DNA from: Octopus sinensis
Lineage: Eukaryota
Direction of reading: 5' to 3'
NCBI RefSeq assembly: GCF_006345805.1
Contig: NW_021833058.1
Coordinates: 22,155-86,154, forward strand
DNA length: 64,000 nucleotides
The notes under the pieces were generated by a model. That model was not told the origin of the DNA, made no database searches, and worked only from the letters and a program-made list of their open reading frames with translations. Below are positions 10,514 to 51,339 of the stretch, in pieces. Numbering within the stretch: the first letter of the stretch is position 1; each line of letters begins with the position of its first letter. The translations under genes and the position numbers were made by a program.

Positions 10514-11490
10514 AGGCGGCGAGATGGCAGAAACGTTAGCACGCCGGGCGAAATGCGTAGCGGTATTTCGTCTGCCGCTACGTTCTGAGTTCAAATTCCG
10601 CCGAGGTCGACTTTGCCTTTCATCCTTTCGGGGTCGATAAATTAAGTACCAGTTACGCACTGGGGTCGATGTAATCGACTTAATACCTATGGCTGTCCTT
10701 GTTTGTCCCCTCTGTGTTTAGCCCCTTGTGGGTAATAAAGAAATAGAAATAGGTATTTCGTCTGCCGTTACGTTCTGAGTTCAAATTCCGCCGAGGTCGA
10801 CTTTGCCTTTCATCCTTCGGGGTCGTCGATAAATCAAGTACCAGTTACGCACTGGGGTCGATATAATCGACTTAATTCGTTTGTCTGTCCTTGTTGTCTC
10901 CTCTGCGTTTAGCCCCTTGTGGGCAGTAAAGAATAAGTATTTCGTCTGCCGCTACGTTCTGAGTTCAAATTCCGCCGAGGTCGACTTTGCCTTTCATCCT
11001 TTCGGGGTCGATAAATCAAGTACCAGTTACGCACTGGGGTCGATATAATCGACTTAATTCGTTTGTCTGTCCTTGTTTGTCTCCTCTGTGTTTAGCCCCT
11101 TGTGGGCAGTAAAGAAATAAGTATTTCGTCTGCCGCTACGTTCTGAGTTCAAATTCCGCCGAGGTCGACTTTGCCTTTCATCCTTTCGGGGTCGATAAAT
11201 CAAGTACCAGTTACGCACTGGGGTCGATATAATCGACTTAATTCGTTTGTCTGTCCTTGTTTGTCTCCTCTGTGTTTAGCCCCTTGTGGGCAGTAAAGAA
11301 ATAAGTATTTCGTCTGCCGCTACGTTCTGAGTTCAAATTCCGCCGAGGTCGACTTTGCCTTTCATCCTTTCGGGGTCGATAAATCAAGTACCAGTTACGC
11401 ACTAGGGTCGATATAATCGACTTAATCCGTTTGTCTGTCCTTGTTTGTCTCCTCTGTGTTTAGCCCCTTGTGGGTAATAAAGAAATAAGA
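10514..11490 (+). mobile_element. tRNA-headed SINE (Meta/MESC-like domain) pentamer: one head plus 5 body units of ~184 bp
   Basis: Head is aggcggcgag.tggcagaaacgttagc. Units start atttcgtctgcc at 10565, 10755, 10939, 11123 and 11307. The core is ggtcgactttgcctttcatcctttcggggtcgataaa. Confidence 0.9.
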
Positions 11491-14034: not shown

Positions 14035-14340
14035 TTGTATGTGTAATAATGAGAAAGAGGGAGGCCGGGCGGAAGACAGAAAAGTGTCAATGAACCCCAA
14101 TTTTTGCTGCAGACACAAAGAAGGAAAAAGACGAGATAGAAGTGAAGTAAAGAGTAATGGGAGGAGGAGGACGGATAAGACAGTACACTTGTGACACGCA
14201 ACCGTCCTTTGTCTCCTCTCTTAACAAAGACGGAAACATTTCCAGGAATAAATCGCAGGTTCAATTCTCATGGAGTGTATCTCAATTCTAAAAACTGTTC
14301 CACCCGTAGCCATCTATCATTTGTTTACTCAGACTATATA

Positions 14341-14754
14341 TTTCTTTACTACCCACAAGAGGCTAAACATAGAGGGGACAAACAACGACAGACAAAGGGA
14401 TCAAGTCGATTATATCGACCCCAGTGCGTAACTGGTACTTAATTTATCGACCCCGAAAGGATGAAAGGCAAGGTCGACCTCGGCGGAATTTGAACTCAGA
14501 ACGTAACGACAGACGAAATACCTATTTCTTTACTACCCACAAGGGGCTAAACACAGAGAGGACAAACAAGGACAGACAAACGGATTAAGTCGATTATATC
14601 GACCCCAGTGCATAACTGGTACTTAATTTATCGACCCCGAAAGGATGAAAGGCAAGGTCGACCTCGGCGGAATTCGAACTCACAACGTAACGACAGACGA
14701 AATACCGCTAAGCATTTCGCCCGACGTGCTAACGTTTCTCTCAGGTCACCGCCT
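14341..14754 (-). mobile_element. Same SINE, dimer
   Basis: Two units plus head. TSD tttactc(a/c)gactata at 14324-14338 and 14756-14770. Confidence 0.9.
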
Positions 14755-15837: not shown

Positions 15838-16400
15838 TATTTTGGCACAAGGCAGCAAGTTCGGGGGAGGGGTAAGTCGAGTACCAGTGTTTTACTGGTA
15901 CTTATGTAATCGACCCCGAAAGGATGAAAGGCAAAGTCGACCTCGGCGGAATTTGAACTCAGAACATAGCAGCAGATGAAATACCTATTTCTTTACTACC
16001 TACAAGGGGCTAAACACAGAGAGGACAAACAAGGACAGACAAACGGATTAAGTCGATTATATCGACCTCAGTTTGTAACTGGTACTTATTTAATCGACCC
16101 CGAAAGGATGAAAGGCAAAGTCGACCTCGGTTGAATTTGAACTCAGAACGTAGCGGCAGACGAAATACCTATTTCTTTATTACCCACAAGGGGCTAAACA
16201 CAGAGGGAACAAACAAGGACAGACATAGGTATTAAGTCGATTACATCGACCCCAGTGCGTAACTGGTACTTAATTTATCGACCCCGAAAGGATGAAAGGC
16301 AAAGTCGACCTCGGCGGAATTTGAACTCACAACGTAACGCAGACGAAATACCGCTAAGCATTTCGCTCGGCGTGCTAACGATTCTTCCAGCTCGCCGCCT
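15838..16400 (-). mobile_element. Same SINE, chimeric trimer (two tail-B units then one tail-A unit)
   Basis: Head is near 16400. The 3'-most unit ends in the older tail (cccccgaacttgctgccttgtgccaaaata). Confidence 0.8.
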
Positions 16401-24793: not shown

Positions 24794-25089
24794 ATATCTA
24801 TCAGTCATTTTAATGTCCGGCAAGTAAAGGCTAAACTTCAGTGAGGAGGTCTTAATAAAACACGATTGAACCACGCTCGGAGTCGTCACGATAATCCTTT
24901 CTACTATAGGCACAGGACCTGAAATTTTGGGGCAGGGGCCAGTCGATTAGGTCGACCCTAGTACGCAACTGGTACTTAATTTATCGACTCTGAAAGGACG
25001 AAAGGCAAAGTCGACCTCGGCTGAAGTTGAACTCAGAACGCAGCGACGAGCGAAATACCGCTAAGCATTCCGTCAAGCGTGCTAAAGAT

Positions 25090-25508
25090 ACTTATTTCTT
25101 TACTACCCACAAGGGGCTAAACACAGAGGGGACAAACAAGGACAGACATAGGTATTAAGTCGATTACATCGACCCCAATGCGTAACTGGTACTTAATTTA
25201 TCGACCCCGAAAGGATGAAAGGCAAAGTCGACCTCAGCGGAATTGGAACTCAGAACGTAACAGCAGACGAAATACCTATTTCTTTATTGCCCATAAGGGG
25301 CTAAACATAGAGGGTACAAACAAGGACAGACATAGGTAATAAGTCGATTACATTGACCCCAGTGCGAAACTGGTATTTATTTAATCGAGCCCGAAAGGAT
25401 GAAAGGCAAAGTCGACCTCGGCGGAATTTGAACTCAGAACGTAACGGCAGACGAAATACGGCTAAGCATTTCGCCCGGCGTGCTAACGATTCTGCCAGCT
25501 CACCGCCT
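25090..25508 (-). mobile_element. Same SINE, dimer, joined to an older 5'-truncated copy at 24895-25089
   Basis: Direct reading. The older copy starts inside its own head at atctttagc. Confidence 0.85.
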
Positions 25509-37621: not shown

Positions 37622-37691
37622 GGATATATATTATATATATATATATAAAAAAAAATAATATGTATGTATATGTATATATATATATTCTATA

Positions 37692-37722
<31 letters not shown>

Positions 37723-37796
37723 GTATATTATATATATATATATAAAATAATAATAATAATGTATGTATATGTATATATATATATATATTATATGTC

Positions 37797-37830
<34 letters not shown>

Positions 37831-37838
37831 CTATATAT

Positions 37839-37886
<48 letters not shown>

Positions 37887-37904
37887 ATATATATATATAT
37901 ATAT
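37622..37904. repeat. (AT)n-rich microsatellite at the 3' end of the array
   Basis: Direct reading. Confidence 0.95.
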
Positions 37905-38043
37905 AATTATTAGAGAGTTATCCACTATGTGGATAACTCTAGTGCTAAAAATAGCTCCGAAGCAACCACAGAAGAACTGTTTCCAACTAGAATCAACATA
38001 CATTTAGCGGAAGGAAGTGAAATACAACGAATAAAATAGATTG

Positions 38044-38119
38044 ACTCTATACAATTGTTTCATTACTAATGTAATATGTAGTTTTACTTACACTTACATC
38101 TATAAATCTTCGGTAGAGT
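38044..38119 (-). ncRNA. Type I hammerhead ribozyme, variant core (unit 1)
   Basis: Minus strand reads ACUCUA-CCGAAGA-[45-nt helix II]-GAAAC-AAUU-GUA^UAGAGU. Helix I is ACUCUA/UAGAGU. Predicted cleavage is between 38050 and 38049. Confidence 0.75.
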
Positions 38120-38532
38120 TTGTCAGAAATGCAATTAATTAGATCGATTCGAGCGTCAAAAACACGAGCGGTCCAACCAATTACATTTTTAGTTATGTCT
38201 CAAATTCCGCGCCAAAAGCATGCCTAGACTCCATTGGAAACGTATGCCGCATCAAATAAAATATTGACTGCCGCGTAGTTAAATTTATAAAATTATAAAT
38301 GAGGGTGAAAAATCGATATTATTTAATAATACCATTAATTTAACACCAATGGCTTAGCACAAAAAACTACGGAGAAAATACAAATTTATACATAAATTAT
38401 TAGAGAGTTATCCACTATGTGGATAACTCTAGGCTAAAAATAGCTCCGAAGCAACCACAGAAGAACTGTTTCCAACTAGAATCAACATACATTTAGCGGA
38501 AGGAAAGTGAAATACAACGAATAAAATGATTG

Positions 38533-38608
38533 ACTCTATACAATTGTTTCATTACTAATGTAATATGTAGTTTTACTTACACTTACATCTATAAATCTTC
38601 GGTAGAGT
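38533..38608 (-). ncRNA. Hammerhead ribozyme (unit 2)
   Basis: Same motif as unit 1: plus-strand actcta-tacaattgtttc...tcttcgg-tagagt. Confidence 0.72.
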
Positions 38609-39023
38609 TGTCAGAAATGCAATTAATTAGATCGATTCGAGCGTCAAAAACACGAGCGGTCCAACCAATTACATTTTTAGTTATGTCTCAAATTCCGCGC
38701 CAAAAGCATGCCTAGACTCCATTGGAAACGTATGCCGCATCAAATAAAATATTGACTGCCGCGTAGTTTAATTTATAAAATTATAAATGAGGGTGAAAAA
38801 TCGATATTAATTTAATATACCATTAATTTAACACCAAGTGGCTTAGCACAAAAAACTACGGAGAAAATACAAATTTATACATAAATTATTAGAGAGTTAT
38901 CCACTATGTGGATAACTCTAGTGCTAAAAATAGCTCCGAAGCAACCACAGAAGAACTGTTTCCAACTAGAATCAACATACATTTAGCGGAAGGAAAGTGA
39001 AATACAACGAATAAAATAGATTG

Positions 39024-39099
39024 ACTCTATACAATTGTTTCATTACTAATGTAATATGTAGTTTTACTTACACTTACATCTATAAATCTTCGGTAGAGT
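39024..39099 (-). ncRNA. Hammerhead ribozyme (unit 3)
   Basis: Same motif, intact. Confidence 0.72.
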
Positions 39100-39512
39100 T
39101 TGTCAGAAATGCAATTAATTAGATCGATTCGAGCGTCAAAAACACGAGCGGTCCAACCAATTACATTTTTAGTTATGTCTCAAATTCCGCGCCAAAAGCA
39201 TGCCTAGACTCCATTGGAAACGTATGCCGCATCAATAAAATATTGACTGCCGCGTAGTTAAATTTTATAAATTATAAATGAGGGTGAAAAATCGATATTA
39301 ATTTAATAATACCATTAATTTAACACCAAGTGGCTTAGCACAAAAAACTACGGAGAAAATACAAATTTATACATAAATTAGTAGAGAGTATCCACTATGT
39401 GGATAACTCTAGTGCTAAAAATAGCTCCGAAGCAACCACAGAGAACTGTTTCCAACTAGAATCAACATACATTTAGCGGAAGGAAAGTGAAATACAACGA
39501 ATAAAATAATTG

Positions 39513-39590
39513 ACTCTATACAATTGTTTCATTACTAATGTTTTAATCTGTAGTTTTCTTACACTTACATCTATAAATCTTCGGTAGAGT
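39513..39590 (-). ncRNA. Hammerhead ribozyme (unit 4; helix II altered)
   Basis: Core and helices I and III are intact. The helix II interior is changed (gttttaatctgtagttttctt). Confidence 0.6.
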
Positions 39591-40003
39591 TTGTCAGAAA
39601 TGCAATTAATTAGATCGATCGAGCGTCAAAAACACGAGCGGTCCAACCAATTACATTTCTAGTTATGTCTCAAATTCCGCGCAAAAGCATGCCTAGACTC
39701 CATTGGAAACGTATGCCGCTCAAATAAAATATTGACTGCCGCGTAGTTAAATTTATAAAATTATAAATGAGGGTGAAAAATCGATATTAATTTAATAATA
39801 CCATTAATTTAACCCAAGTGGCTTAGCACAAAAAACTACGGAGAAAAATACAATTTATACATAAATTATTAGAGAGTTATCCACTATGTGGATAACTCTA
39901 GTGCTAAAAATAGCTCCGAAGCAACCACAGAAGAACTGTTTCCAACTAGAATCAACATACATTTAGCGGAAGGAAAGTGAAATACAACGAATAAAATAGA
40001 TTG

Positions 40004-40079
40004 ACTCTATACAATTGTTTCATTACTAATGTAATATGTAGTTTTACTTACACTTACATCTATAAATCTTCGGTAGAGT
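40004..40079 (-). ncRNA. Hammerhead ribozyme (unit 5)
   Basis: Same motif, intact. Confidence 0.72.
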
Positions 40080-40809
40080 TTTCAGAAATGCATTAATTAG
40101 ATCGATTCGAGCGTCAAAAACACGAGCGGTCCAACCAATTACATTTTTAGTTATGTCTCAAATTCCGCGCCAAAAGCATGCCTAGACTCCATTGGAAACG
40201 TATGCCGCATCAAATAAAATATTGACTGCCGCGTAGTTAATTTATAAAATTATAAATGAGGGTGAAAAATCGATATTAATTTAATAATACCATTAATTTA
40301 AACCAAGTGGCTTAGCACAAAAAACTACGGAGAAAATACAAATTTATACATAAATTATTAGAGAGTTATCCACTATGTGGATAACTCTAGTGCTAAAAAT
40401 AGCTCCGAAGCAACCACAGAAGAACTGTTTCCAACTAGAATCAACATACATTTAGCGGAAGGAAGTTATGTCTCAAATTCCGCGCCAAAAGCATGCCTAG
40501 ACTCCATTGGAAACGTATGCCGCATCAAATAAAATATTGACTGCCGCGTAGTTAAATTTATAAAATTATAAATGAGGGTGAAAAATCGATATTAATCTAA
40601 TAATACCATTAATTTAACACCAAGTGGCTTAGCACAAAAAACTACGGAGACAATACACAATTTATACATAAATTATTAGAGAGTTATCCACTATGTGGAT
40701 AACTCTAGTGCTAAAAATAGCTCCGAAGCAACCACAGAAGAACTGTTTCCAACTAGAATCAACATACATTTAGCGAAGGAAAGTGAAATACAACGAATAA
40801 AATAGATTG

Positions 40810-40884
40810 ACTCTATACAATTGTTCATTACTAATGTAATATGTAGTTTTACTTACACTTACATCTATAAATCATCGGTAGAGT
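40810..40884 (-). ncRNA. Hammerhead ribozyme (unit 7; core CCGAUGA, GAAA shortened by 1 nt)
   Basis: Plus strand tcatcgg gives CCGATGA, a change at the tolerant N7 position. ttgttca lacks one T, which is either a read error or an inactivating change. Confidence 0.5.
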
Positions 40885-41297
40885 TTGTCAGAAATGCAAT
40901 TAATTAGATCGATTCGAGCGTCAAAAACACGAGCGGTCCAACCAATTACATATTTTTATATGTCTCAAATTCCGCGCCAAAAGCATGCCTATACTCCATT
41001 GGAAACGTATGCCGCATCAAATAAAATATTGACTGCCGCGTAGTTAAATTTATAAAATTATAAATGAGGGTGAAAAATCGATATTAATTTAATAATACCA
41101 TTAATTTAACACCAAGTGGCTTAGCACAAAAAACTACGGAGAAAATACAAATTTATACATAAATTATTAGAGAGTATCCACTATGTGGATAACTCTAGTG
41201 CTAAAAATAGCTCCGAAGCAACCACAGAAGAACTGTTTCCACTAGAATCAACATACATTTAGCGGAAGGAAAGTGAAATACAACGAATAAATGATTG

Positions 41298-41372
41298 ACT
41301 CTATACAATTGTTTCATTACTAATGTAATATGTAGTTTTACTTACACTTACATCTATAATCTTCGGTAGAGT
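41298..41372 (-). ncRNA. Hammerhead ribozyme (unit 8)
   Basis: Same motif, with a 1-nt deletion at the base of helix II. Confidence 0.65.
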
Positions 41373-41787
41373 TTGTCAGGATGCAATTAATTAGATCGAT
41401 TCGAGCGTCAAAAACACGAGCGGTCCAACCAATTACATTTTTAGTTATGTCTCAAATTCCGCGCCAAAAGCATGCCTAGACTCCATTGGAAACGTATGCC
41501 GCATCCAATAAAATATTGACTGCCGCGTAGTTAAATTTATAAAATTATAAATGAGGGTGTGAAAAATCGATATTAATTTAATAATACCATTATTTAACAC
41601 CAAGTGGCTTAGCACAAAAAACTACGGAGAAAATACAAATTTATACATAAATTATTAGAGAGTTATCCACTATGTGGATAACTCTAGTGCTAAAAATAGC
41701 TCCGAAGCAACCACAGAAGAACTGTTTCCAACTAGAATCAACATACATTTCGGAAGGAAAGTGAAATACAACGAATAAAATAGATTG

Positions 41788-41863
41788 ACTCTATACAATT
41801 GTTTCATTACTAATGTAATATGTAGTTTTACTTACACTTACATCTATAAATCTTCGGTAGAGT
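41788..41863 (-). ncRNA. Hammerhead ribozyme (unit 9)
   Basis: Same motif, intact. Confidence 0.72.
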
Positions 41864-42276
41864 TTGTCAGAAATGCAATAATTAGATCGATTCGAGCGTC
41901 AAAAACACGAGCGGTCCACCAATTACATTTTTAGTTATGTCTCAAATTCCGCGCAAAAAGCATGCCTAGACTCCATTGGAACGTATGCCGCATCAAATAA
42001 AATATTGACTGCCGCGTAGTTAAATTTATAAAATTATAAATGAGGGTGAAAAATCGATATTAATTTAATAATACCATTAATTTAACACCAAGTGGCTTAG
42101 CACAAAAAACTACGGAGAAAATACAAATTTATACATAAATTATTAGAGAGTTATCCACTATGTGGATAACTCTAGTGCTAAAAATAGCTCCGAAGCAACC
42201 ACAGAAGAACTGTTTCCACTAGAATCAACATACATTTAGCGGAAGGAAAGTGAAATACAACGAATAAAATAGATTG

Positions 42277-42351
42277 ACTCTATACAATTGTTTCATTACT
42301 ATGTAATATGTAGTTTTACTTACACTTACATCTATAAATCTTCGGTAGAGT
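42277..42351 (-). ncRNA. Hammerhead ribozyme (unit 10)
   Basis: Same motif, with a 1-nt deletion in helix II. Confidence 0.68.
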
Positions 42352-42795
42352 TTGTCAGAAATGCAATTAATTAGATCGATTCGAGCGTCAAAAACACGAG
42401 CGGTCCAACCAATTACATTTTTAGTTATGTCTCAAATTCCGCGCCAAAAGCATGCCTAGACTCCATTGGAAACGTATGCCGCATCAAATAAAATATTGAC
42501 TGCCGCGTAGTTAAATTTATAAAATTATAAATGAGGGTGAAAAATCGATATTAATTTAATAATACCATTAATTTACACCAAGTGGCTAGCACAAAAAACT
42601 ACGGAGAAAATACAAATTTATACATAAATATTAGAGAGTTATCCACTATGTGGATAACTCTAGTGCAAAAATAGCTCCGAAGCAACCACAGAAGAACTGT
42701 TTCCAACTAGAATCAACATACATTTAGCGGAAGGAAAGTGAAATACAACAATAAAATAGATTGACTCTATACAATTGTTTCATTACTAATGTAAT

Positions 42796-42860
42796 GCATT
42801 TCTGACAAACTCTACCGAAGATTTATAGATGTAAGTGTAAGTAAAACTACATATTACATT
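42796..42860 (+). other. 65-bp inverted segment terminating the array (5' inversion)
   Basis: gcatttctgac...catattacatt is the exact reverse complement of the monomer segment aatgtaatatg...gtcagaaatgc. aatgtaat is duplicated at the junction. Confidence 0.9.
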
Positions 42861-42869
42861 TCTTCTTAC

Positions 42870-42931
42870 CAAGGGCTATGGGTGCCGGTAACAAATTCTG
42901 AAATAGCCTTTAAGATATCTACGATTAACCA
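42870..42931 (-). CDS. Candidate small exon (WLIVDILKAISEFVTGTHSP), product unknown
   Basis: Acceptor ttccccttgcag|TGG and donor TTG|gtaaga. One frame is open to the donor. No homology recognised. Confidence 0.3.
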
Positions 42932-43284
42932 CTGCAAGGGGAATTACTCCTGTAAGGCAAACGGGGCTTGGTTTTTTCACAGCGGGGGGTTTCCTTGACA
43001 AGGCAGGCTTAGATGAACACACACACACATAAAACATAATATATATATATATTTTTTCTGCCACCCAACGGTTCTCGCGGCAGTAGCCCATGACAGCCGA
43101 ACGATCAAACGCACAACACGTACACAAAAAATGTTTCTACCCCTACGCCAACACACACATATATAGAACAGTATACACACACACACGTCTCTAAGTAGAT
43201 TTTTCTCGCCCTTATAAAACATCCAATATTCCTTAAATAGTCAGAAACTTATTCTCGGTCACAAAGAACACCCACACACCTCAC

Positions 43285-43446
43285 CCACATGATTGACCGA
43301 TGCCTGACCCGTTAAATTCTTCAGCCACCGGTTCTCAACATACACTGATAAACAGTTTCGCCATGGGCTCTTAGGAGCATAGTTCGATTTGTTTTTGCTC
43401 CGCCTCTGTTCTGTTTTTTTTTTCCAACGGATTTCCTATTTTCTTC
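43285..43446 (-). other. Candidate exon (possibly 5' UTR ending ATG TGG)
   Basis: Strong acceptor tgtgtctttctcttcag and donor GTGG|gtgagg. No frame is open end to end unless the A10 run is miscalled. Confidence 0.25.
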
Positions 43447-43587
43447 CTGAAGAGAAAGACACAATATGGTCCCATTATTCAATCGGATTTTGGTAATTTG
43501 TGCCTTTCGAAACACGGTAGAATGAAATAAAACGATTTCTGTTCAATCTGCGTTCAGCTCCATTTCTTCAATTCACCAATAATGTTT

Positions 43588-43659
<72 letters not shown>

Positions 43660-44021
43660 AATACCGTGGGTCTATCAGCCGCTACCAAATTCAAACTATG
43701 ACGAACATGGCGTTAAAATCGATAATTTTAAACTAACGGAGACAACACTCGTATATCGCCTGAGGAAACACAACTAAATCTCATTATGCAAATAAACAGT
43801 TGCATAATCAAATACCTATATTCTTGGAGAACTAAGTTGCGTCGAAACAATTGTAGCGAATAATAAATAAATGTCCAACCGTACTTCTTCTTCTTGACAC
43901 CAGTCTCTTCAATTTTACATTCACACACGACGAATGCCCTAAGTTAAACTTGGAAGTAAGTAATAATAATCTTTACCGATAGTACTGAGTAATTCTGAAG
44001 ATGGACGAGGTTTATATATAT

Positions 44022-44333
44022 GTGGAGGCGCAATGGCCTAGTGGTTAGGGCAGCGGACTCGCGGTCGTAGGATCGCGGTTTCGATTCCCAGACCGGGCGT
44101 TGTGAGTGTTTATTGAGCGAAAACACCTAATGCTCCACGAGGCTCAGGCAGCGGCAGGTGGTGATCCCTGCTGTACTCTTTCGCTACAACTTTCTCTCAC
44201 TCTTTCTTCTGTTGGCCTGCTCGCTTAGCCAGCGGGGTGGCGTCATTTGAAAGCTAAAACAATGCGAAGCGCATTGTGACCAGCGATGTGTAGCAACATC
44301 TGATGGTCTGGTCGGTCATGGTGATCACGGTGA
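44022..44333 (+). mobile_element. tRNA-derived SINE, same head, tail 3
   Basis: Head matches. The tail ends ...ggtctggtcggtcatggtgatcacggtga. Confidence 0.8.
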
Positions 44334-47526: not shown

Positions 47527-48032
47527 GAACGAGGGATGATGTGTAACCGTTCAGAATGCTATGGTTAATTTACAATAGTCGTATTATGTGAGTAGCTAGG
47601 GCTGCTGACTTTGGTTTAAGCTACGATGGCTTGTAACAGTAAATTAGGCTTCCATTGAAATCTTCAATGTTTATAGAACTTACCAAAGATGGATTAGTTT
47701 TAGCGAATTGTGATACTGAGGCGTCGTTGTCAAATATTTAACTGTAGAACTGAAATGATTGTTGCAAAGATAATAAGTCTGTGTAGCTGTTCTGTACACA
47801 TGTTGACGCACAAGAGAAGTGGTTTATTCAAGTGGTTGTACAACTGCCTACAGGTTAGTTTGTGAAAAAGCAAAATCCGCAGATAAAAAAATGTCTAGAA
47901 AAGGCAGTTGAAAAATCTGAGGATTGTTAGGTCGGAGCTAGGGACGAGAGTTGAGAAAAACGAATGTGTGTAGTACAAAAGGAAAAGAAAATTCTTTCTT
48001 TTGTAATAATTTTCAAGATAATCTATTTTCAT

Positions 48033-49186
48033 ACCTATTTCTTTACTACCCACAAGGGGCTAAACACAGAGAGGACAAACAAAGACAGACAAACGGATTA
48101 AGTCGATTATATCGACCCCAGTGCGTAACTGGTACTTTATTTAATCGACCCCGAAAGGATGAAAGGCAAAGGCGACCTCGGCGGAATTTGAACTCAGAAC
48201 GTAACGACAGATGGAATACCTATTTCATTATTATCCACAAGGGGCTAAACATAGAGGGGACAAACAAGGACAGACATAGGTATTAAGTCGATTACATCGA
48301 CCCCAGTGCGTAACTGGTACTTAATTTATCGACCCCGAAAGGATGAAAGGTAAAGTCGACCTTGGCGGAATTTAAACTCAGAACGTAACGACAGACGAAA
48401 TACCTATTTCTTTATTACCCACAAGGGGCTAAACATAGAGGAGACAAACATGGACAGACATAGGTACTAAGTCGATTATATCGACCCCAGTGCGTAACTG
48501 GTACTTAATTTATCGACCCCGAAAGGATGAAAGGCAAAGTCGACCTCGGCGGAATTTGAACTCAGAACGTAACGACAGACGAAATACCTGTTTCTTTACT
48601 ACCCACAAGGGGCTAAACACAGAGAGGACAAACAAGGACAGACATAGGTACTAAGTCGATTACATCGACCCCGGTGCGTAACTGGTACTTATTTAATCGA
48701 CCCCGGAAGGATGAAAGGCAAAGTTGACCTCGGCGGAATTTGAACTCAGAACGTAACGGCAGACGAAATACCTATTTCTTTATTACCCACAAGGGGCTAA
48801 ACACAGAGGGGACAAACAAGGACAGACATAGGTATTAAGTCGATTACATCGACTCCAGTGCGTAACTGGTACTTATTTAATCGACCCCGAAAGGATGAAA
48901 GGCAAAGTCGACCTCGGCGGAATTTGAACTCACAACGTAACGCAGACGAAATACCTATTTCTTTATTATCCACAAGGGGCTAAACACAGAGGGGACAAAC
49001 AAGGACAGACATAGGTATTAAGTCGATTACATCGACTCCAGTGCGTAACTGGTACTTATTTAATCGACCCCGAAAGGATGAAAGGCAAAGTCGACCTCGG
49101 CGGAATTTGAACTCACAACGTAACGCAGACGAAATACCGCTACGCATTTCGCCCGGCGTGCTAACGTTTCTGCCAGCTCGCCGCCT
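48033..49186 (-). mobile_element. Same SINE, hexamer with a single TSD
   Basis: Units at 48033, 48218, 48402, 48586, 48770 and 48953, with the head ending at 49186. caagataatctattttcatacc is repeated at 48014-48035 and 49192-49213. Confidence 0.92.
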
Positions 49187-50741: not shown

Positions 50742-51339
50742 TGTTTCTTTACTGCCCACAAGGGGCTAAACATACAGGGGACAAACAAGGACAGACAAAG
50801 GGATTAAGTCGATTACATCGACCCAGTGCGAAACTGGTACTTAATTTATCGACCCTGAAAGGATGAAAGGCAAAGTCGACCTCGGCGGAATTTGAACTCA
50901 GAACGTAACGGCAGACGAAATACCTATTTCTTTACTACCCACAAGGGGCTATACATAGAGGGGACAAACAAGGACAGACAAAGGGATTAAGTCGATTACA
51001 TCGACCCAGTGCGTAACTGGTACTTAATTTATCGACCCTGAAAGGATGAAAGGCAAAGTCGACCTCGGCGGAATTTGAACTCAGAACGTAACGGCAGACG
51101 AAATACCTATTTCTTTACTACCCACAAGGGGCTATACATAGAGGGGACAAACAAGGACAGACAAAGGGATTAAGTCGATTACATCGACCCAGTGCGTAAC
51201 TGGTACTTAATTTATCGACCCTGAAAGGATGAAAGGCAAAGTCGACCTCGGCGGAATTTGAACTCAGAACGTAACGGCAGACGAAATACGGCTACGCATT
51301 TCGCCCGGCGTGCTAACGTTTCTGCCAGCTCGCCGTCTT
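50742..51339 (-). mobile_element. Same SINE, trimer with a single TSD
   Basis: aaataatcatta(g/a)ctaatata at 50721-50741 and 51341-51361. Confidence 0.9.

What the first reader, a model, noticed from the sequence alone, without database searches (positions are those of the whole stretch)
37905..42860. Retrozyme-like array: ~489-nt monomers each bounded by a hammerhead ribozyme
Seen: 11 head-to-tail, nearly identical non-coding units. Nine of them contain, at the same position on the minus strand, a complete type I hammerhead fold (ACUCUA-CCGAAGA-helix II-GAAAC-AAUU-GUA^UAGAGU). The array has an (AT)n 3' flank and a 5' inversion. Known: animal retrozymes are tandem monomers separated by type I hammerheads. 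Their transcripts self-cleave to monomers with 5'-OH and 2',3'-cyclic phosphate ends, circularise, and are thought to be reinserted as multimers by Penelope-like RTs. Inference: this is a young cephalopod retrozyme, or a multimerised Penelope pLTR, producing ~489-nt linear and circular RNAs. A plain motif search would label it as a satellite.
Basis: partly seen in the sequence, partly recalled or inferred. Interest (0 to 1): 0.92.

Follow-up and report, generated by a model that had tools for sequence, protein, structure and literature searches.

The report
Octopus-type hammerhead retrozyme array in (TA)n
This is one insertion of a young, dispersed, non-coding retroelement family built of ~489-nt tandem units that each carry a hammerhead ribozyme with one unusual core change. 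It is a new example of the known animal "retrozyme" / Penelope-like class, not an ordinary satellite.

Summary
Window 37,887-42,860 is a ~10-unit head-to-tail array (period 488-489, 96-97% identity). It runs into (AT)n at its 3' end and has a 75-nt inverted segment at its 5' end. Eight units carry the full minus-strand motif ACUCUA-CCGAAGA-helix II-GAAAC-AAUU-GUA^UAGAGU.

It is not a satellite. The unit is dispersed over more than 20 chromosomes of a 2.72-Gb genome as short arrays. These almost always form two head-to-head arms whose outer ends lie in (TA)n. One arm ends at unit position ~155 and the other at ~255 in 14 of 14 two-armed loci, and the inner junctions vary. These are the published hallmarks of Penelope-like element (PLE) insertions. 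The genome's abundant RT + GIY-YIG PLE also ends in (TA)n and carries its own min-hammerhead.

Rfam finds no hammerhead, but the fold is real. At least 276 sister copies have a canonical CUGANGA core and the same 3' half, and they show strong covariation in helices I and II. The window's family (231 exact copies) has a fixed, derived U4-to-C change. The sense RNA is highly structured (z = -6.8).

Self-cleavage and circular RNA are untested. Verdict: new member of a known kind, of moderate interest.

The parts
37624..37905 (.). (AT)n microsatellite: the target and flank into which the 3' (outer) end of the array runs
   Evidence: TRF. All 17 family insertions examined end in (TA)n.
37887..38049 (-). 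Terminal partial unit (unit positions 1 to ~161), the 3' end of the arm. This is the 'short', tail-less type of end. It contains a perfect 13-bp hairpin (37911-37941) about 6-15 nt upstream of the junction with (AT)n.
   Evidence: BLAST map; sequence; end types.
38050..42769 (-). Head-to-tail units cut at the predicted ribozyme sites. Eight are full units: 38050-38538, 38539-39029, 39030-39518, 39519-40009, 40816-41303, 41304-41793, 41794-42282 and 42283-42769. One 806-nt block (40010-40815) is two units fused by a 174-nt deletion at about 40464.
   Evidence: All units carry the subfamily A haplotype.
38044..38119 (-). Type I hammerhead motif, shown here as one example. It reads: helix I ACUCUA/UAGAGU; core CCGAAGA (U4C); 45-nt helix II starting with U.U; GAAA; helix III C-AAUU-G; cleavage after GUA between 38050 and 38049. 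Intact copies also lie at 38533-38608, 39024-39099, 39513-39590 (helix II damaged), 40004-40079, 41298-41372, 41788-41863 and 42277-42351.
   Evidence: Covariation in sister families.
40810..40884 (-). Hammerhead copy with N7 = U and GAAAC shortened to GAAC. The core is broken as assembled, although this may be a homopolymer-length error.
42770..42795 (-). The 5'-most, truncated unit (unit positions 464-489). It holds only the 3' half of a hammerhead.
42786..42860 (+). Inverted arm (unit positions 397-471), head-to-head with the main arm. It is unusually short and does not reach a (TA)n end, so it has been truncated or interrupted at 42860.
   Evidence: In other loci this arm continues to a (TA)n end.

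Best explanation
The array is one insertion of a young, non-coding, non-autonomous retroelement family of the animal 'non-LTR retrozyme' kind. Its unit is a ~489-493-nt highly structured RNA read from the minus strand. Each unit carries a type I hammerhead with a minimal, palindromic helix III, which should form the active double-hammerhead only when two copies meet, as in multimeric transcripts.

Proposed cycle:
1. An array is transcribed.
2. The hammerheads cut it into monomers with 5'-OH and 2',3'-cyclic phosphate ends.
3. A host tRNA ligase circularises the monomers.
4. A Penelope-like RT/GIY-YIG enzyme nicks a (TA)n microsatellite.
5. The TA-ended DNA primes on one of two UAUA-containing sites of the RNA (unit positions ~155 and ~255, each about 20-25 nt downstream of a hairpin).
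6. The RT copies the template round and round, giving multimers.
7. The second target strand primes likewise, giving the inverted arm.
8. The two cDNAs are joined at a variable internal point.

Shown here: the array anatomy, its dispersal, the (TA)n ends, the two alternative ends, the hammerhead fold (by covariation), strand-specific RNA structure, the homogeneity of units within one insertion, and the presence of (TA)n-targeting PLEs.

Inferred: transcription, cleavage (probably attenuated by the fixed U4C change), circularisation, and which RT mobilises the family.
For: Array and motif.

Dispersal: at least 229 matches on more than 20 chromosomes, from 1314 candidates of which 39 were scored, and 231 exact ribozyme copies.

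Insertion architecture in 21 independent loci:
- outer ends always lie in (TA)n;
- in 14 of 14 two-armed loci one arm ends at ~152-161 and the other at ~247-260;
- of seven single- or truncated-arm loci, four end at ~259-260, two (including the window) at ~161 and one at 129;
- inner junctions differ at every locus.
This matches the PLE hallmarks listed in PMC8557442.

Autonomous PLEs: the genome has many GIY-YIG copies, some in ~781-aa open frames, with RVT_1 plus a C-terminal GIY-YIG. They end in ACAAATATA(TA)n, some have a ~30-nt one-sided tail, and they carry a conserved min-hammerhead with the U3-A8 core covariant.

Hammerhead fold:
- 276 copies have a canonical CUGANGA core and the same GAAAC-AAUU-GUA half, with N7 = A/C/G/U.
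- Helix I has 5 of 6 pairs with two-sided changes.
- Helix II base pairs are 94-100% paired with 4-6 pair types each.
- The covariation score is 0.538 against 0.21 +/- 0.016 in shuffles (0/500) and 0.166 or less when slid.
- Over the full helix II, 93% of cells are paired, with 36 double changes against 9.9 +/- 2.5.

Within the window's family:
- Subfamilies A and B differ at 11 of 493 sites.
- Two of those sites are the two sides of one helix II pair (U-A to C-G).
- Three more keep pairing through G.U.
- An intermediate haplotype carries both halves of the compensatory change.

RNA structure: circular MFE is -131 kcal/mol against -92.6 +/- 5.7 (z = -6.8) for the sense strand, and z = -2.8 for the antisense strand.

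Dimer: the MFE is the classical double-hammerhead, -35.4 against -27.0 kcal/mol for two monomers.

Single-template origin: substitution divergence is 0.4% within insertions (0.34% between opposite arms) against 2.3% between loci. Some private substitutions are shared by all units of both arms, and no array mixes haplotypes.

Non-coding: the longest open run is 50 aa.

Precedents for each oddity: U4C in a viroid (PMC3088659); U.U at the base of helix II and a 1-bp helix III with a palindromic tetraloop in active axolotl hammerheads (PMC7229834).
Against: - No Rfam hammerhead model matches, even at E <= 10 on a 121-nt stretch. This is weak evidence, because the 45-position model also missed another canonical-core motif.
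- U4C is fixed in the family: 0 copies carry U4 against 231 with C4. It is reported to reduce activity considerably in vitro (PMC3088659). Combined with a U.U at 10.1/11.1 and an AU-rich helix II, catalysis may be very weak or lost.
- Insertion ends at unit positions ~155 and ~255, and arrays run through the cleavage site. The template was therefore not a linear, cleaved monomer. The data do not by themselves distinguish a circle from an uncleaved multimer.
- There is no sequence similarity between the unit and the 3' region of the abundant autonomous PLE: score 23 against a null of 21.5 +/- 2. The mobilising enzyme is inferred only from the shared target and architecture.
- No expression data were available.
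- Covariation counts come from related genomic copies selected by a pattern that fixed the core, so the core's conservation in the sister families is by construction.
Confidence: 0.7

Rival explanations
1. The retroelement is the same, but the hammerhead is a catalytically dead relic. U4C plus the weak base of helix II abolish useful self-cleavage. The family is mobilised by PLE machinery from uncleaved multimeric transcripts. The conserved hairpins serve RT recognition or RNA stability rather than catalysis.
For: - U4C is fixed in the youngest and most abundant family and is reported to lower activity considerably in vitro (PMC3088659).
- PLE min-hammerheads show low activity in vitro (PMC4209133).
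- Naiad PLEs proliferate without canonical hammerheads (PMC8557442).
- Arrays run uninterrupted through the cleavage sites, and insertion ends are not at the cleavage site.
Against: - All 11 other fixed core positions are retained in the consensus of both subfamilies.
- A compensatory change in helix II arose after U4C.
- The U4C viroid variant remains functional in vivo (PMC3088659).
- The double-hammerhead is the predicted dimer MFE.
- Within-insertion homogeneity fits a monomer template, which requires processing.
Confidence: 0.22
2. The array is a multimerised pseudo-LTR or 3' region of an autonomous Penelope-like element, not a separate non-autonomous family.
For: PLEs form partial tandems and carry hammerheads in their pLTRs (PMC4209133, PMC8557442). 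Only one PLE family's 3' region could be compared.
Against: - There is no ORF in or next to any of the 21 insertions examined.
- The unit has no similarity to the abundant PLE's 3' UTR.
- That PLE's hammerhead is of a different type: UUGAUAA...GAAAC-AU-GU.
- Arrays consist only of the 489-nt unit.
Confidence: 0.04
3. The array is ordinary satellite DNA, or a DNA-level rolling-circle element (Helitron-like, or extrachromosomal circular DNA reinsertion) that happens to contain a hammerhead-like sequence.
For: - It has a tandem structure.
- It inserts in TA-rich sequence, and Helitrons insert at A|T.
- A hairpin lies about 20 nt upstream of each 3' end.
Against: - The family forms many short arrays at independent loci with defined ends in (TA)n and variable 5' truncation.
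- The ends read ...TTATGTATA and ...ATTTTATA, not 5'-TC...CTRR-3'.
- The head-to-head arm architecture is the PLE signature (PMC8557442).
- Substitutions preserve pairing through G.U on one strand only, and the fold z-score is strongly strand-asymmetric, which points to selection on an RNA.
Confidence: 0.04

Closest known systems
Metazoan non-LTR retrozymes with type I hammerheads (Cervera & de la Pena 2020, PMC7229834; Li, Clavereau & Pollet 2026 preprint, 10.64898/2026.07.22.740005)
   Same: - Short, low-GC, non-coding tandem units (reported range 51-972 bp), each with a type I hammerhead.
- Dispersed multi-copy arrays, mostly of fewer than 8 units.
- A link to PLEs.
- A helix III of 1 bp plus a palindromic tetraloop (axolotl HHR_Amex1).
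- A U.U at the base of helix II (HHR_Amex2).
   Different: - U4C is fixed in the catalytic core.
- Helix II is very long (45 nt).
- The host is apparently a cephalopod, which the papers read here do not describe.
- The two-arm architecture is explicit, with two alternative 3' ends in (TA)n.
- Expression and circles are not shown here.
Penelope-like elements and their pLTR min-hammerheads (Cervera & de la Pena 2014, PMC4209133; Craig et al. 2021, PMC8557442)
   Same: - Partial tandems.
- An adjacent inverted 5'-truncated copy.
- An extension ('tail') at one end only.
- Microsatellite (TA)n targets.
- Hammerheads with a palindromic helix III that are thought to act as dimers.
   Different: - There is no RT/EN ORF.
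- The 'tail' is about 100 nt rather than 30-40 nt.
- The unit is unrelated in sequence to the genome's abundant PLE, whose own hammerhead uses the U3-A8 covariant core.
Amphibian / Schistosoma satellite hammerheads (newt satellite 2, Sm-alpha)
   Same: Tandem ~330-nt units, transcribed, with type I hammerheads that cleave as double-hammerheads.
   Different: Those form very large copy-number families with canonical cores. Here a few hundred to a few thousand copies form short arrays with defined retroelement-like ends.
Viroid hammerhead U4C variant (cited in Perreault et al. 2011, PMC3088659)
   Same: The same core substitution. It lowers activity in vitro but is tolerated in vivo.
   Different: That variant is in an infectious plant RNA replicon, not in a genomic retroelement family where the change is fixed.

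Membership tests
Hammerhead ribozyme, type I | Three helices around a junction, with helix I open (5' and 3' ends in helix I) | tested here: met
   The MFE of the 83-nt segment forms helices I and II. The hammerhead structure scores -12.1 against an MFE of -13.5 kcal/mol.
Hammerhead ribozyme, type I | Conserved core C3 U4 G5 A6 N7 G8 A9 ... G12 A13 A14 A15.1 ... U16.1 H17 | tested here: not met
   11 of 12 fixed positions match. Position 4 is C in all 231 exact copies, and no copy has U. Sister families have the full consensus.
Hammerhead ribozyme, type I | Helices supported by compensatory covariation | tested here: met
   Across the genome's superfamily the covariation score is 0.538 against 0.21 +/- 0.016 (0/500 shuffles). 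Helix I has 5 of 6 pairs with two-sided changes. Helix II has 36 double changes against 9.9 +/- 2.5. One compensatory pair lies inside the window's own family.
Hammerhead ribozyme, type I | Match to Rfam Hammerhead_1 (RF00163) at or above gathering score | tested here: not met
   There is no hit at gathering score, nor at E <= 10 on 6.2 kb or on 121 nt. The 45-position model is also blind to another long-helix-II motif. The genome has at least 7 canonical hits elsewhere.
Hammerhead ribozyme, type I | Site-specific Mg2+-dependent self-cleavage | not testable with these tools
   This needs in vitro transcription of monomer and dimer constructs.
Animal non-LTR retrozyme | Short, low-GC, non-coding tandem units, each with a hammerhead | tested here: met
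   Period 488-489. GC is about 0.33. The longest open run is 50 aa. The motif is present in 8-9 of about 10 units.
Animal non-LTR retrozyme | Dispersed copies at many loci (mobility) | tested here: met
   Flanks and junctions are independent at each locus.
Animal non-LTR retrozyme | Expressed as monomeric linear and circular RNAs | not testable with these tools
   No transcriptome access. Indirect support only: a strand-specific structured RNA and single-template homogeneity of insertions.
PLE-mobilised element | Insertion signature: 5' truncation, partial tandems, adjacent inverted copy, one-sided tail, microsatellite target | tested here: met
   compared with the description in PMC8557442.
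PLE-mobilised element | Autonomous RT + GIY-YIG PLE present in the same genome with the same target preference | tested here: met
   The PLE ends in ACAAATATA(TA)n.
PLE-mobilised element | Sequence homology of the unit to a PLE pLTR / 3' end | tested here: not met
   There is no similarity to the one abundant PLE family available.
Helitron | 5'-TC ... CTRR-3' termini, with a 3' hairpin and insertion at A|T | tested here: not met
   The ends read ...TTATGTATA and ...ATTTTATA. A hairpin and a TA target are present, but the termini and the two-arm architecture do not fit.

The most novel reading that the evidence does not exclude
The strict rule that the two arms of an insertion never use the same 3' end (14 of 14) would follow if both (TA)n ends of the cut target prime at once on a single monomeric circular RNA. 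Such a circle offers exactly one copy of each of its two UAUA priming sites. Both reverse transcripts would then run round the circle. If so, these insertions are a genomic footprint of twin-primed rolling-circle reverse transcription of a ribozyme-made circle. The one-sided 'tail' of PLEs in general would have the same cause. The fixed U4C change would be a tuned, attenuated ribozyme rather than decay.
Probability: 0.2. Interest if true: 0.7.

Novelty: new member of a known kind. Interest (0 to 1): 0.5.

Why it matters
Animal retrozymes and their link to Penelope-like elements are known, so the existence of this family is not a surprise. Three things make it a useful case.

1. It is a very young family in which a normally invariant core nucleotide (U4) is replaced in every copy, while canonical sister families sit in the same genome. 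This is a natural experiment on how much ribozyme activity a retrozyme needs.
2. Its insertions are clean enough to read the integration mechanism. They show (TA)n targets, two alternative priming sites, an obligate pairing of one end of each type, and units within one insertion that look copied from one monomer.
3. It shows that standard Rfam scans miss a whole superfamily of several hundred hammerheads with long helix II and minimal helix III in a cephalopod-type genome. Repeat annotation would call them satellites.

Tried and rejected
- **Rfam searches.** I ran Rfam at gathering score and at E <= 10 on the whole window, on the array and on a 121-nt stretch. Only chance hits came back (TD-2, mir-297 and similar). 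I do not treat this as evidence against a hammerhead, because the model also missed a canonical-core motif in L050.
- **L050 as a positive control.** The L050 motif turned out to be an imperfect control. The base of its helix II is only 3 bp, so I do not rely on it.
- **Unit against autonomous PLE loci.** BLAST and Smith-Waterman alignment of the unit against 30 GIY-YIG loci and the PLE 3' UTR found no significant similarity. The weak hit in L050 (E = 1e-4) is AT-rich and was not pursued.
- **Fetching full-length PLE loci.** I did not try to obtain those sequences another way.
- **RNAalifold without helix I context.** On the ribozyme alignment it chose a spurious structure, so I used the hammerhead structure explicitly.
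- **Endless ORF on a circle (489 = 3 x 163).** Rejected, because every frame has many stops.
- **Snap-back (hairpin) origin of the inverted arms.** Rejected, because the inner ends of the two arms are not symmetrical.
- **Simple twin priming on one linear multimer.** This predicts inner ends near the second priming site, which is not observed.
- **tRNA scan.** ARAGORN found no tRNA in the window.

Full report
**1. What is in the window**

Tandem Repeats Finder reports two adjoining arrays, 37896-40464 (period 489, 5.2 copies, 97% matches) and 40464-42795 (period 488, 4.8 copies, 96%). An (AT)n tract lies at 37624-37905. I cut the minus strand at GTA^TAGAGT and mapped one unit back by BLAST. 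This gives:
- a terminal partial unit (unit positions 1 to ~161; 37887-38049);
- eight full units of 487-491 nt;
- one 806-nt block in which unit 349-489 plus 1-33 is deleted at about 40464;
- a 5'-most fragment (unit 464-489; 42770-42795).

At 42786-42860 the + strand carries unit positions 397-471, so the array ends in a head-to-head inversion.

The motif ACTCTA-CCGAAGA-45 nt-GAAAC-AATT-GTA^TAGAGT is complete in eight units. A ninth has GAAAC shortened to GAAC. Many differences between units are single-base length changes in homopolymers. This fits a long-read assembly of an unplaced contig (the window is G000:C9529). The unit is non-coding, with a longest open run of 50 aa in any frame.

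**2. Is the motif a hammerhead?**

Rfam gives nothing, at gathering score or at E <= 10, even on a 121-nt stretch. Read against the hammerhead numbering, the motif has:
- helix I of 6 bp;
- core C3 C4 G5 A6 A7 G8 A9;
- a 45-nt helix II that opens with a U.U (10.1/11.1);
- G12 A13 A14 A15.1;
- helix III of A-U and C-G closed by AAUU;
- U16.1 A17, then the cleavage site.

Eleven of twelve fixed core positions match, and U4 is C. A descriptor this relaxed fires about once per Mb per strand in composition-matched random sequence, so about 0.001 hits are expected per unit.

Each oddity has an experimentally characterised precedent:
- U4C in a viroid. Activity falls in vitro but is sufficient in vivo (PMC3088659).
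- A U.U at the base of helix II, in axolotl HHR_Amex2.
- A one-base-pair helix III with a palindromic tetraloop, in HHR_Amex1. Both axolotl motifs cleave well only as dimers (PMC7229834; PMC4209133).

ACAAUUGU is a palindrome. The predicted MFE of two copies is the classical double-hammerhead, with an 8-bp intermolecular helix III: -35.4 against -27.0 kcal/mol for two monomers.

**3. Comparative evidence from the same genome**

Pattern searches of the 2.72-Gb assembly gave these counts:
- 231 exact copies of CCGAAGA-N(30-55)-GAAACAATTGTATAGAGT;
- none of the same family with U4;
- 98 copies with a canonical CTGANGA core and the same 3' half;
- 276 copies when helix I is left free.
Reversed-pattern controls gave 0 in every search.

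The canonical copies fall into several families:
- Their helix I strands differ but stay complementary: ACUCUA/UAGAGU, AUGUUG/CAACAU, ACCUCA/UGGGGU, AUUUAG/CUAAAC, AUGUGG/CUACAC and others.
- N7 is A, C, G or U.
- 10.1/11.1 is U.U, U-A, A-U or G.U.

On a trimmed alignment (A2) the covariation score is 0.538, against 0.21 +/- 0.016 in shuffles (0/500) and 0.166 or less when the partners are slid. Helix I has 5 of 6 pairs with two-sided changes, and helix II pairs 10.2-10.4 are 94-100% paired. On the full helix II (A1), 93% of cells pair against 27-42% when slid, with 36 double changes against 9.9 +/- 2.5.

Caveat: these are related genomic copies chosen by a pattern that fixed the core. The helices are tested by this analysis; the core's conservation is not.

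The window's family is therefore a derived (U4C) member of a bona fide type I hammerhead superfamily. The canonical relatives also occur as tandems (518-526-nt spacing) and as inverted pairs (coordinates).

**4. The RNA as a whole**

From 46 distinct full units I derived two subfamily consensuses, A and B, each 493 nt. They differ at 11 sites.
- Two sites (447 and 471) are the two sides of one helix II pair, changing U-A to C-G.
- Three sites (44, 52, 132) keep their pair through G.U.
- Two sites extend helices.
- One site breaks a pair.

An intermediate haplotype in L039 carries both halves of the compensatory change. Because both subfamilies have C4, this change arose after U4C.

Folded as a circle, the sense monomer has an MFE of -131 kcal/mol against -92.6 +/- 5.7 for dinucleotide shuffles (z = -6.8). 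The antisense strand gives z = -2.8. The strand asymmetry and the G.U-compatible substitutions point to selection on the minus-strand RNA.

**5. Not a satellite: the family is mobile**

The unit matches at least 229 places on more than 20 chromosomes, with only 39 of 1314 candidates scored. I examined 21 independent loci.
- Every outer end runs into (TA)n, at one of two unit positions: ...CTCTAATAATTTAT(G)TATA at ~152-161, or ...CTCATTTATAATT(T)TATA at ~247-260.
- Both sites share ATAATTT..TATAAATTT, and each lies about 20-25 nt downstream of a hairpin.
- Most insertions have two head-to-head arms. In 14 of 14 such loci one arm has the short end and the other the long end (0.5^14 = 6e-5 if the choices were independent and equal).
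- Of seven single- or truncated-arm loci, four end at ~259-260, two (including the window) at ~161 and one at 129.
- The inner junction differs at every locus, and flanks beyond the microsatellite are unrelated.

Published PLE insertions show 5' truncation, partial tandems, an adjacent inverted 5'-truncated copy, an extension present at one end only, and a microsatellite bias that includes (TA)n (PMC8557442). These loci match that description.

The window's array is the tail-less type of arm and is the longest seen, at ~10 units against 1-4 elsewhere. Its partner arm is cut short at 42860.

**6. The likely machinery**

The genome has many GIY-YIG copies: 147 scored out of 4846 candidates, several in ~781-aa open frames. 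L054 encodes RVT_1 followed by a C-terminal GIY-YIG, with a CX4CXXC linker.

Across 18 copies from diverged subfamilies, the last ~135 nt are the most conserved part of the 3' region. They contain UUGAUAA-GGUUC...GAACC-GAAAC-AU-GU(A/U), a min-hammerhead with the U3-A8 core covariant known from PLEs (PMC4209133; PMC3088659). They end in ACAAATATA(TA)n. Six copies carry a ~30-nt tail.

So (TA)n-targeting, hammerhead-bearing PLEs are present and young. The 489-nt unit shows no sequence similarity to this PLE's 3' region, so the partnership is inferred from target and architecture only.

**7. What the template was**

Insertions end at unit positions ~155 or ~255, and arrays run through the cleavage site repeatedly. 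The template therefore cannot have been a linear, cleaved monomer. It was either a circle or an uncleaved multimer.

Units within one insertion differ by 0.4% in substitutions (0.34% between opposite arms), against 2.3% between loci. Some insertions have private substitutions shared by all units on both arms. No insertion mixes subfamily haplotypes. This is what copying one monomer sequence round and round predicts. A transcript of a very homogeneous source array is not excluded.

**8. Verdict**

The element is best filed as a new, young member of the animal non-LTR retrozyme / PLE-dependent class. The assembly size matches the published 2.72-Gb Octopus sinensis genome, which is circumstantial support for a cephalopod host.

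It fails strict hammerhead membership at one defining position (U4), so catalysis is the main open point. I put about 0.7 on an active, dimer-dependent, probably attenuated ribozyme within a PLE-mobilised retrozyme. I put about 0.2 on the same element with a dead ribozyme, and small weights on the pLTR, satellite and Helitron-like readings.

Neither cephalopod hammerheads nor retrozymes turned up in the library searched. Curated TE libraries could not be consulted.

Noticed in passing
window 43756-43859 (+): A second hammerhead from a different family, with a canonical core: ucgc-CUGAGGA-77-nt helix II-GAAAC-AAUU-GUA^gcga. It lies between (TA)n at 43588-43653 and a short TATATATAT near 44017, about 900 nt from the array. 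It resembles the hit at G000:C5:77199499 (TATCAC-CTGAGGA...GTGATT). It is probably a 5'-truncated copy of another retrozyme or PLE family inserted in the same microsatellite-rich spot.
   Followed up: partly
window 10563-11489, 14339-14706, 15894-16352, 25088-25459, 48031-49138, 50744-51289: A 183-184-nt unit forms short tandem arrays (2-6 copies, 90-98% matches) at six separate places in the window, in both orientations. This is another dispersed family of short arrays. No Rfam family matches it and no hammerhead-like motif was found in it.
   Followed up: no
window ~44028-44100 (+): A tRNA-like stretch (ggcgcaatggcctagtggttagggc...ggtttcgattccc) looks like the head of a tRNA-derived SINE. 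ARAGORN calls no tRNA in the window.
   Followed up: partly
L054 2366-2400 and the aligned copies L047-L076: The genome's abundant RT + GIY-YIG Penelope-like element carries a conserved min-hammerhead with the U3-A8 covariant core (UUGAUAA...GAAAC-AU-GU) about 64 nt from its 3' end. It ends in ACAAATATA(TA)n. In 6 of 18 copies it has a ~30-nt tail (CCCACTCGTATACGAGCTAATCT...).
   Followed up: partly
G000:C16:25146363-25146408 and 25146794-25146839 (-): Two Rfam Hammerhead_1 hits above gathering score lie 431 nt apart on one strand, among at least 7 canonical hits in the genome. This is probably yet another retrozyme family, with short helices that Rfam can see.
   Followed up: no
L050 ~2600-2690: A canonical-core hammerhead-like motif (CTGATGA-gc...-GAAAC-TCGA-GTT) lies next to (TA)n and a ~150-nt direct repeat. 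The base of its helix II is weak (3 bp), and Rfam does not call it.
   Followed up: partly
L045 units at 2338(-), 2830(-), 3630(+): A at unit site 132 is shared by two units on opposite arms but not by the unit between them. This is the only departure seen from within-insertion uniformity. It could reflect gene conversion between arms or a two-template event.
   Followed up: no
window 42861-43587: Non-family sequence starts abruptly inside the inverted arm, at unit position 471, with no (TA)n. In other loci this arm runs on to a (TA)n end. This could be a deletion, a later insertion or a misassembly on this unplaced contig; it was not resolved.
   Followed up: no
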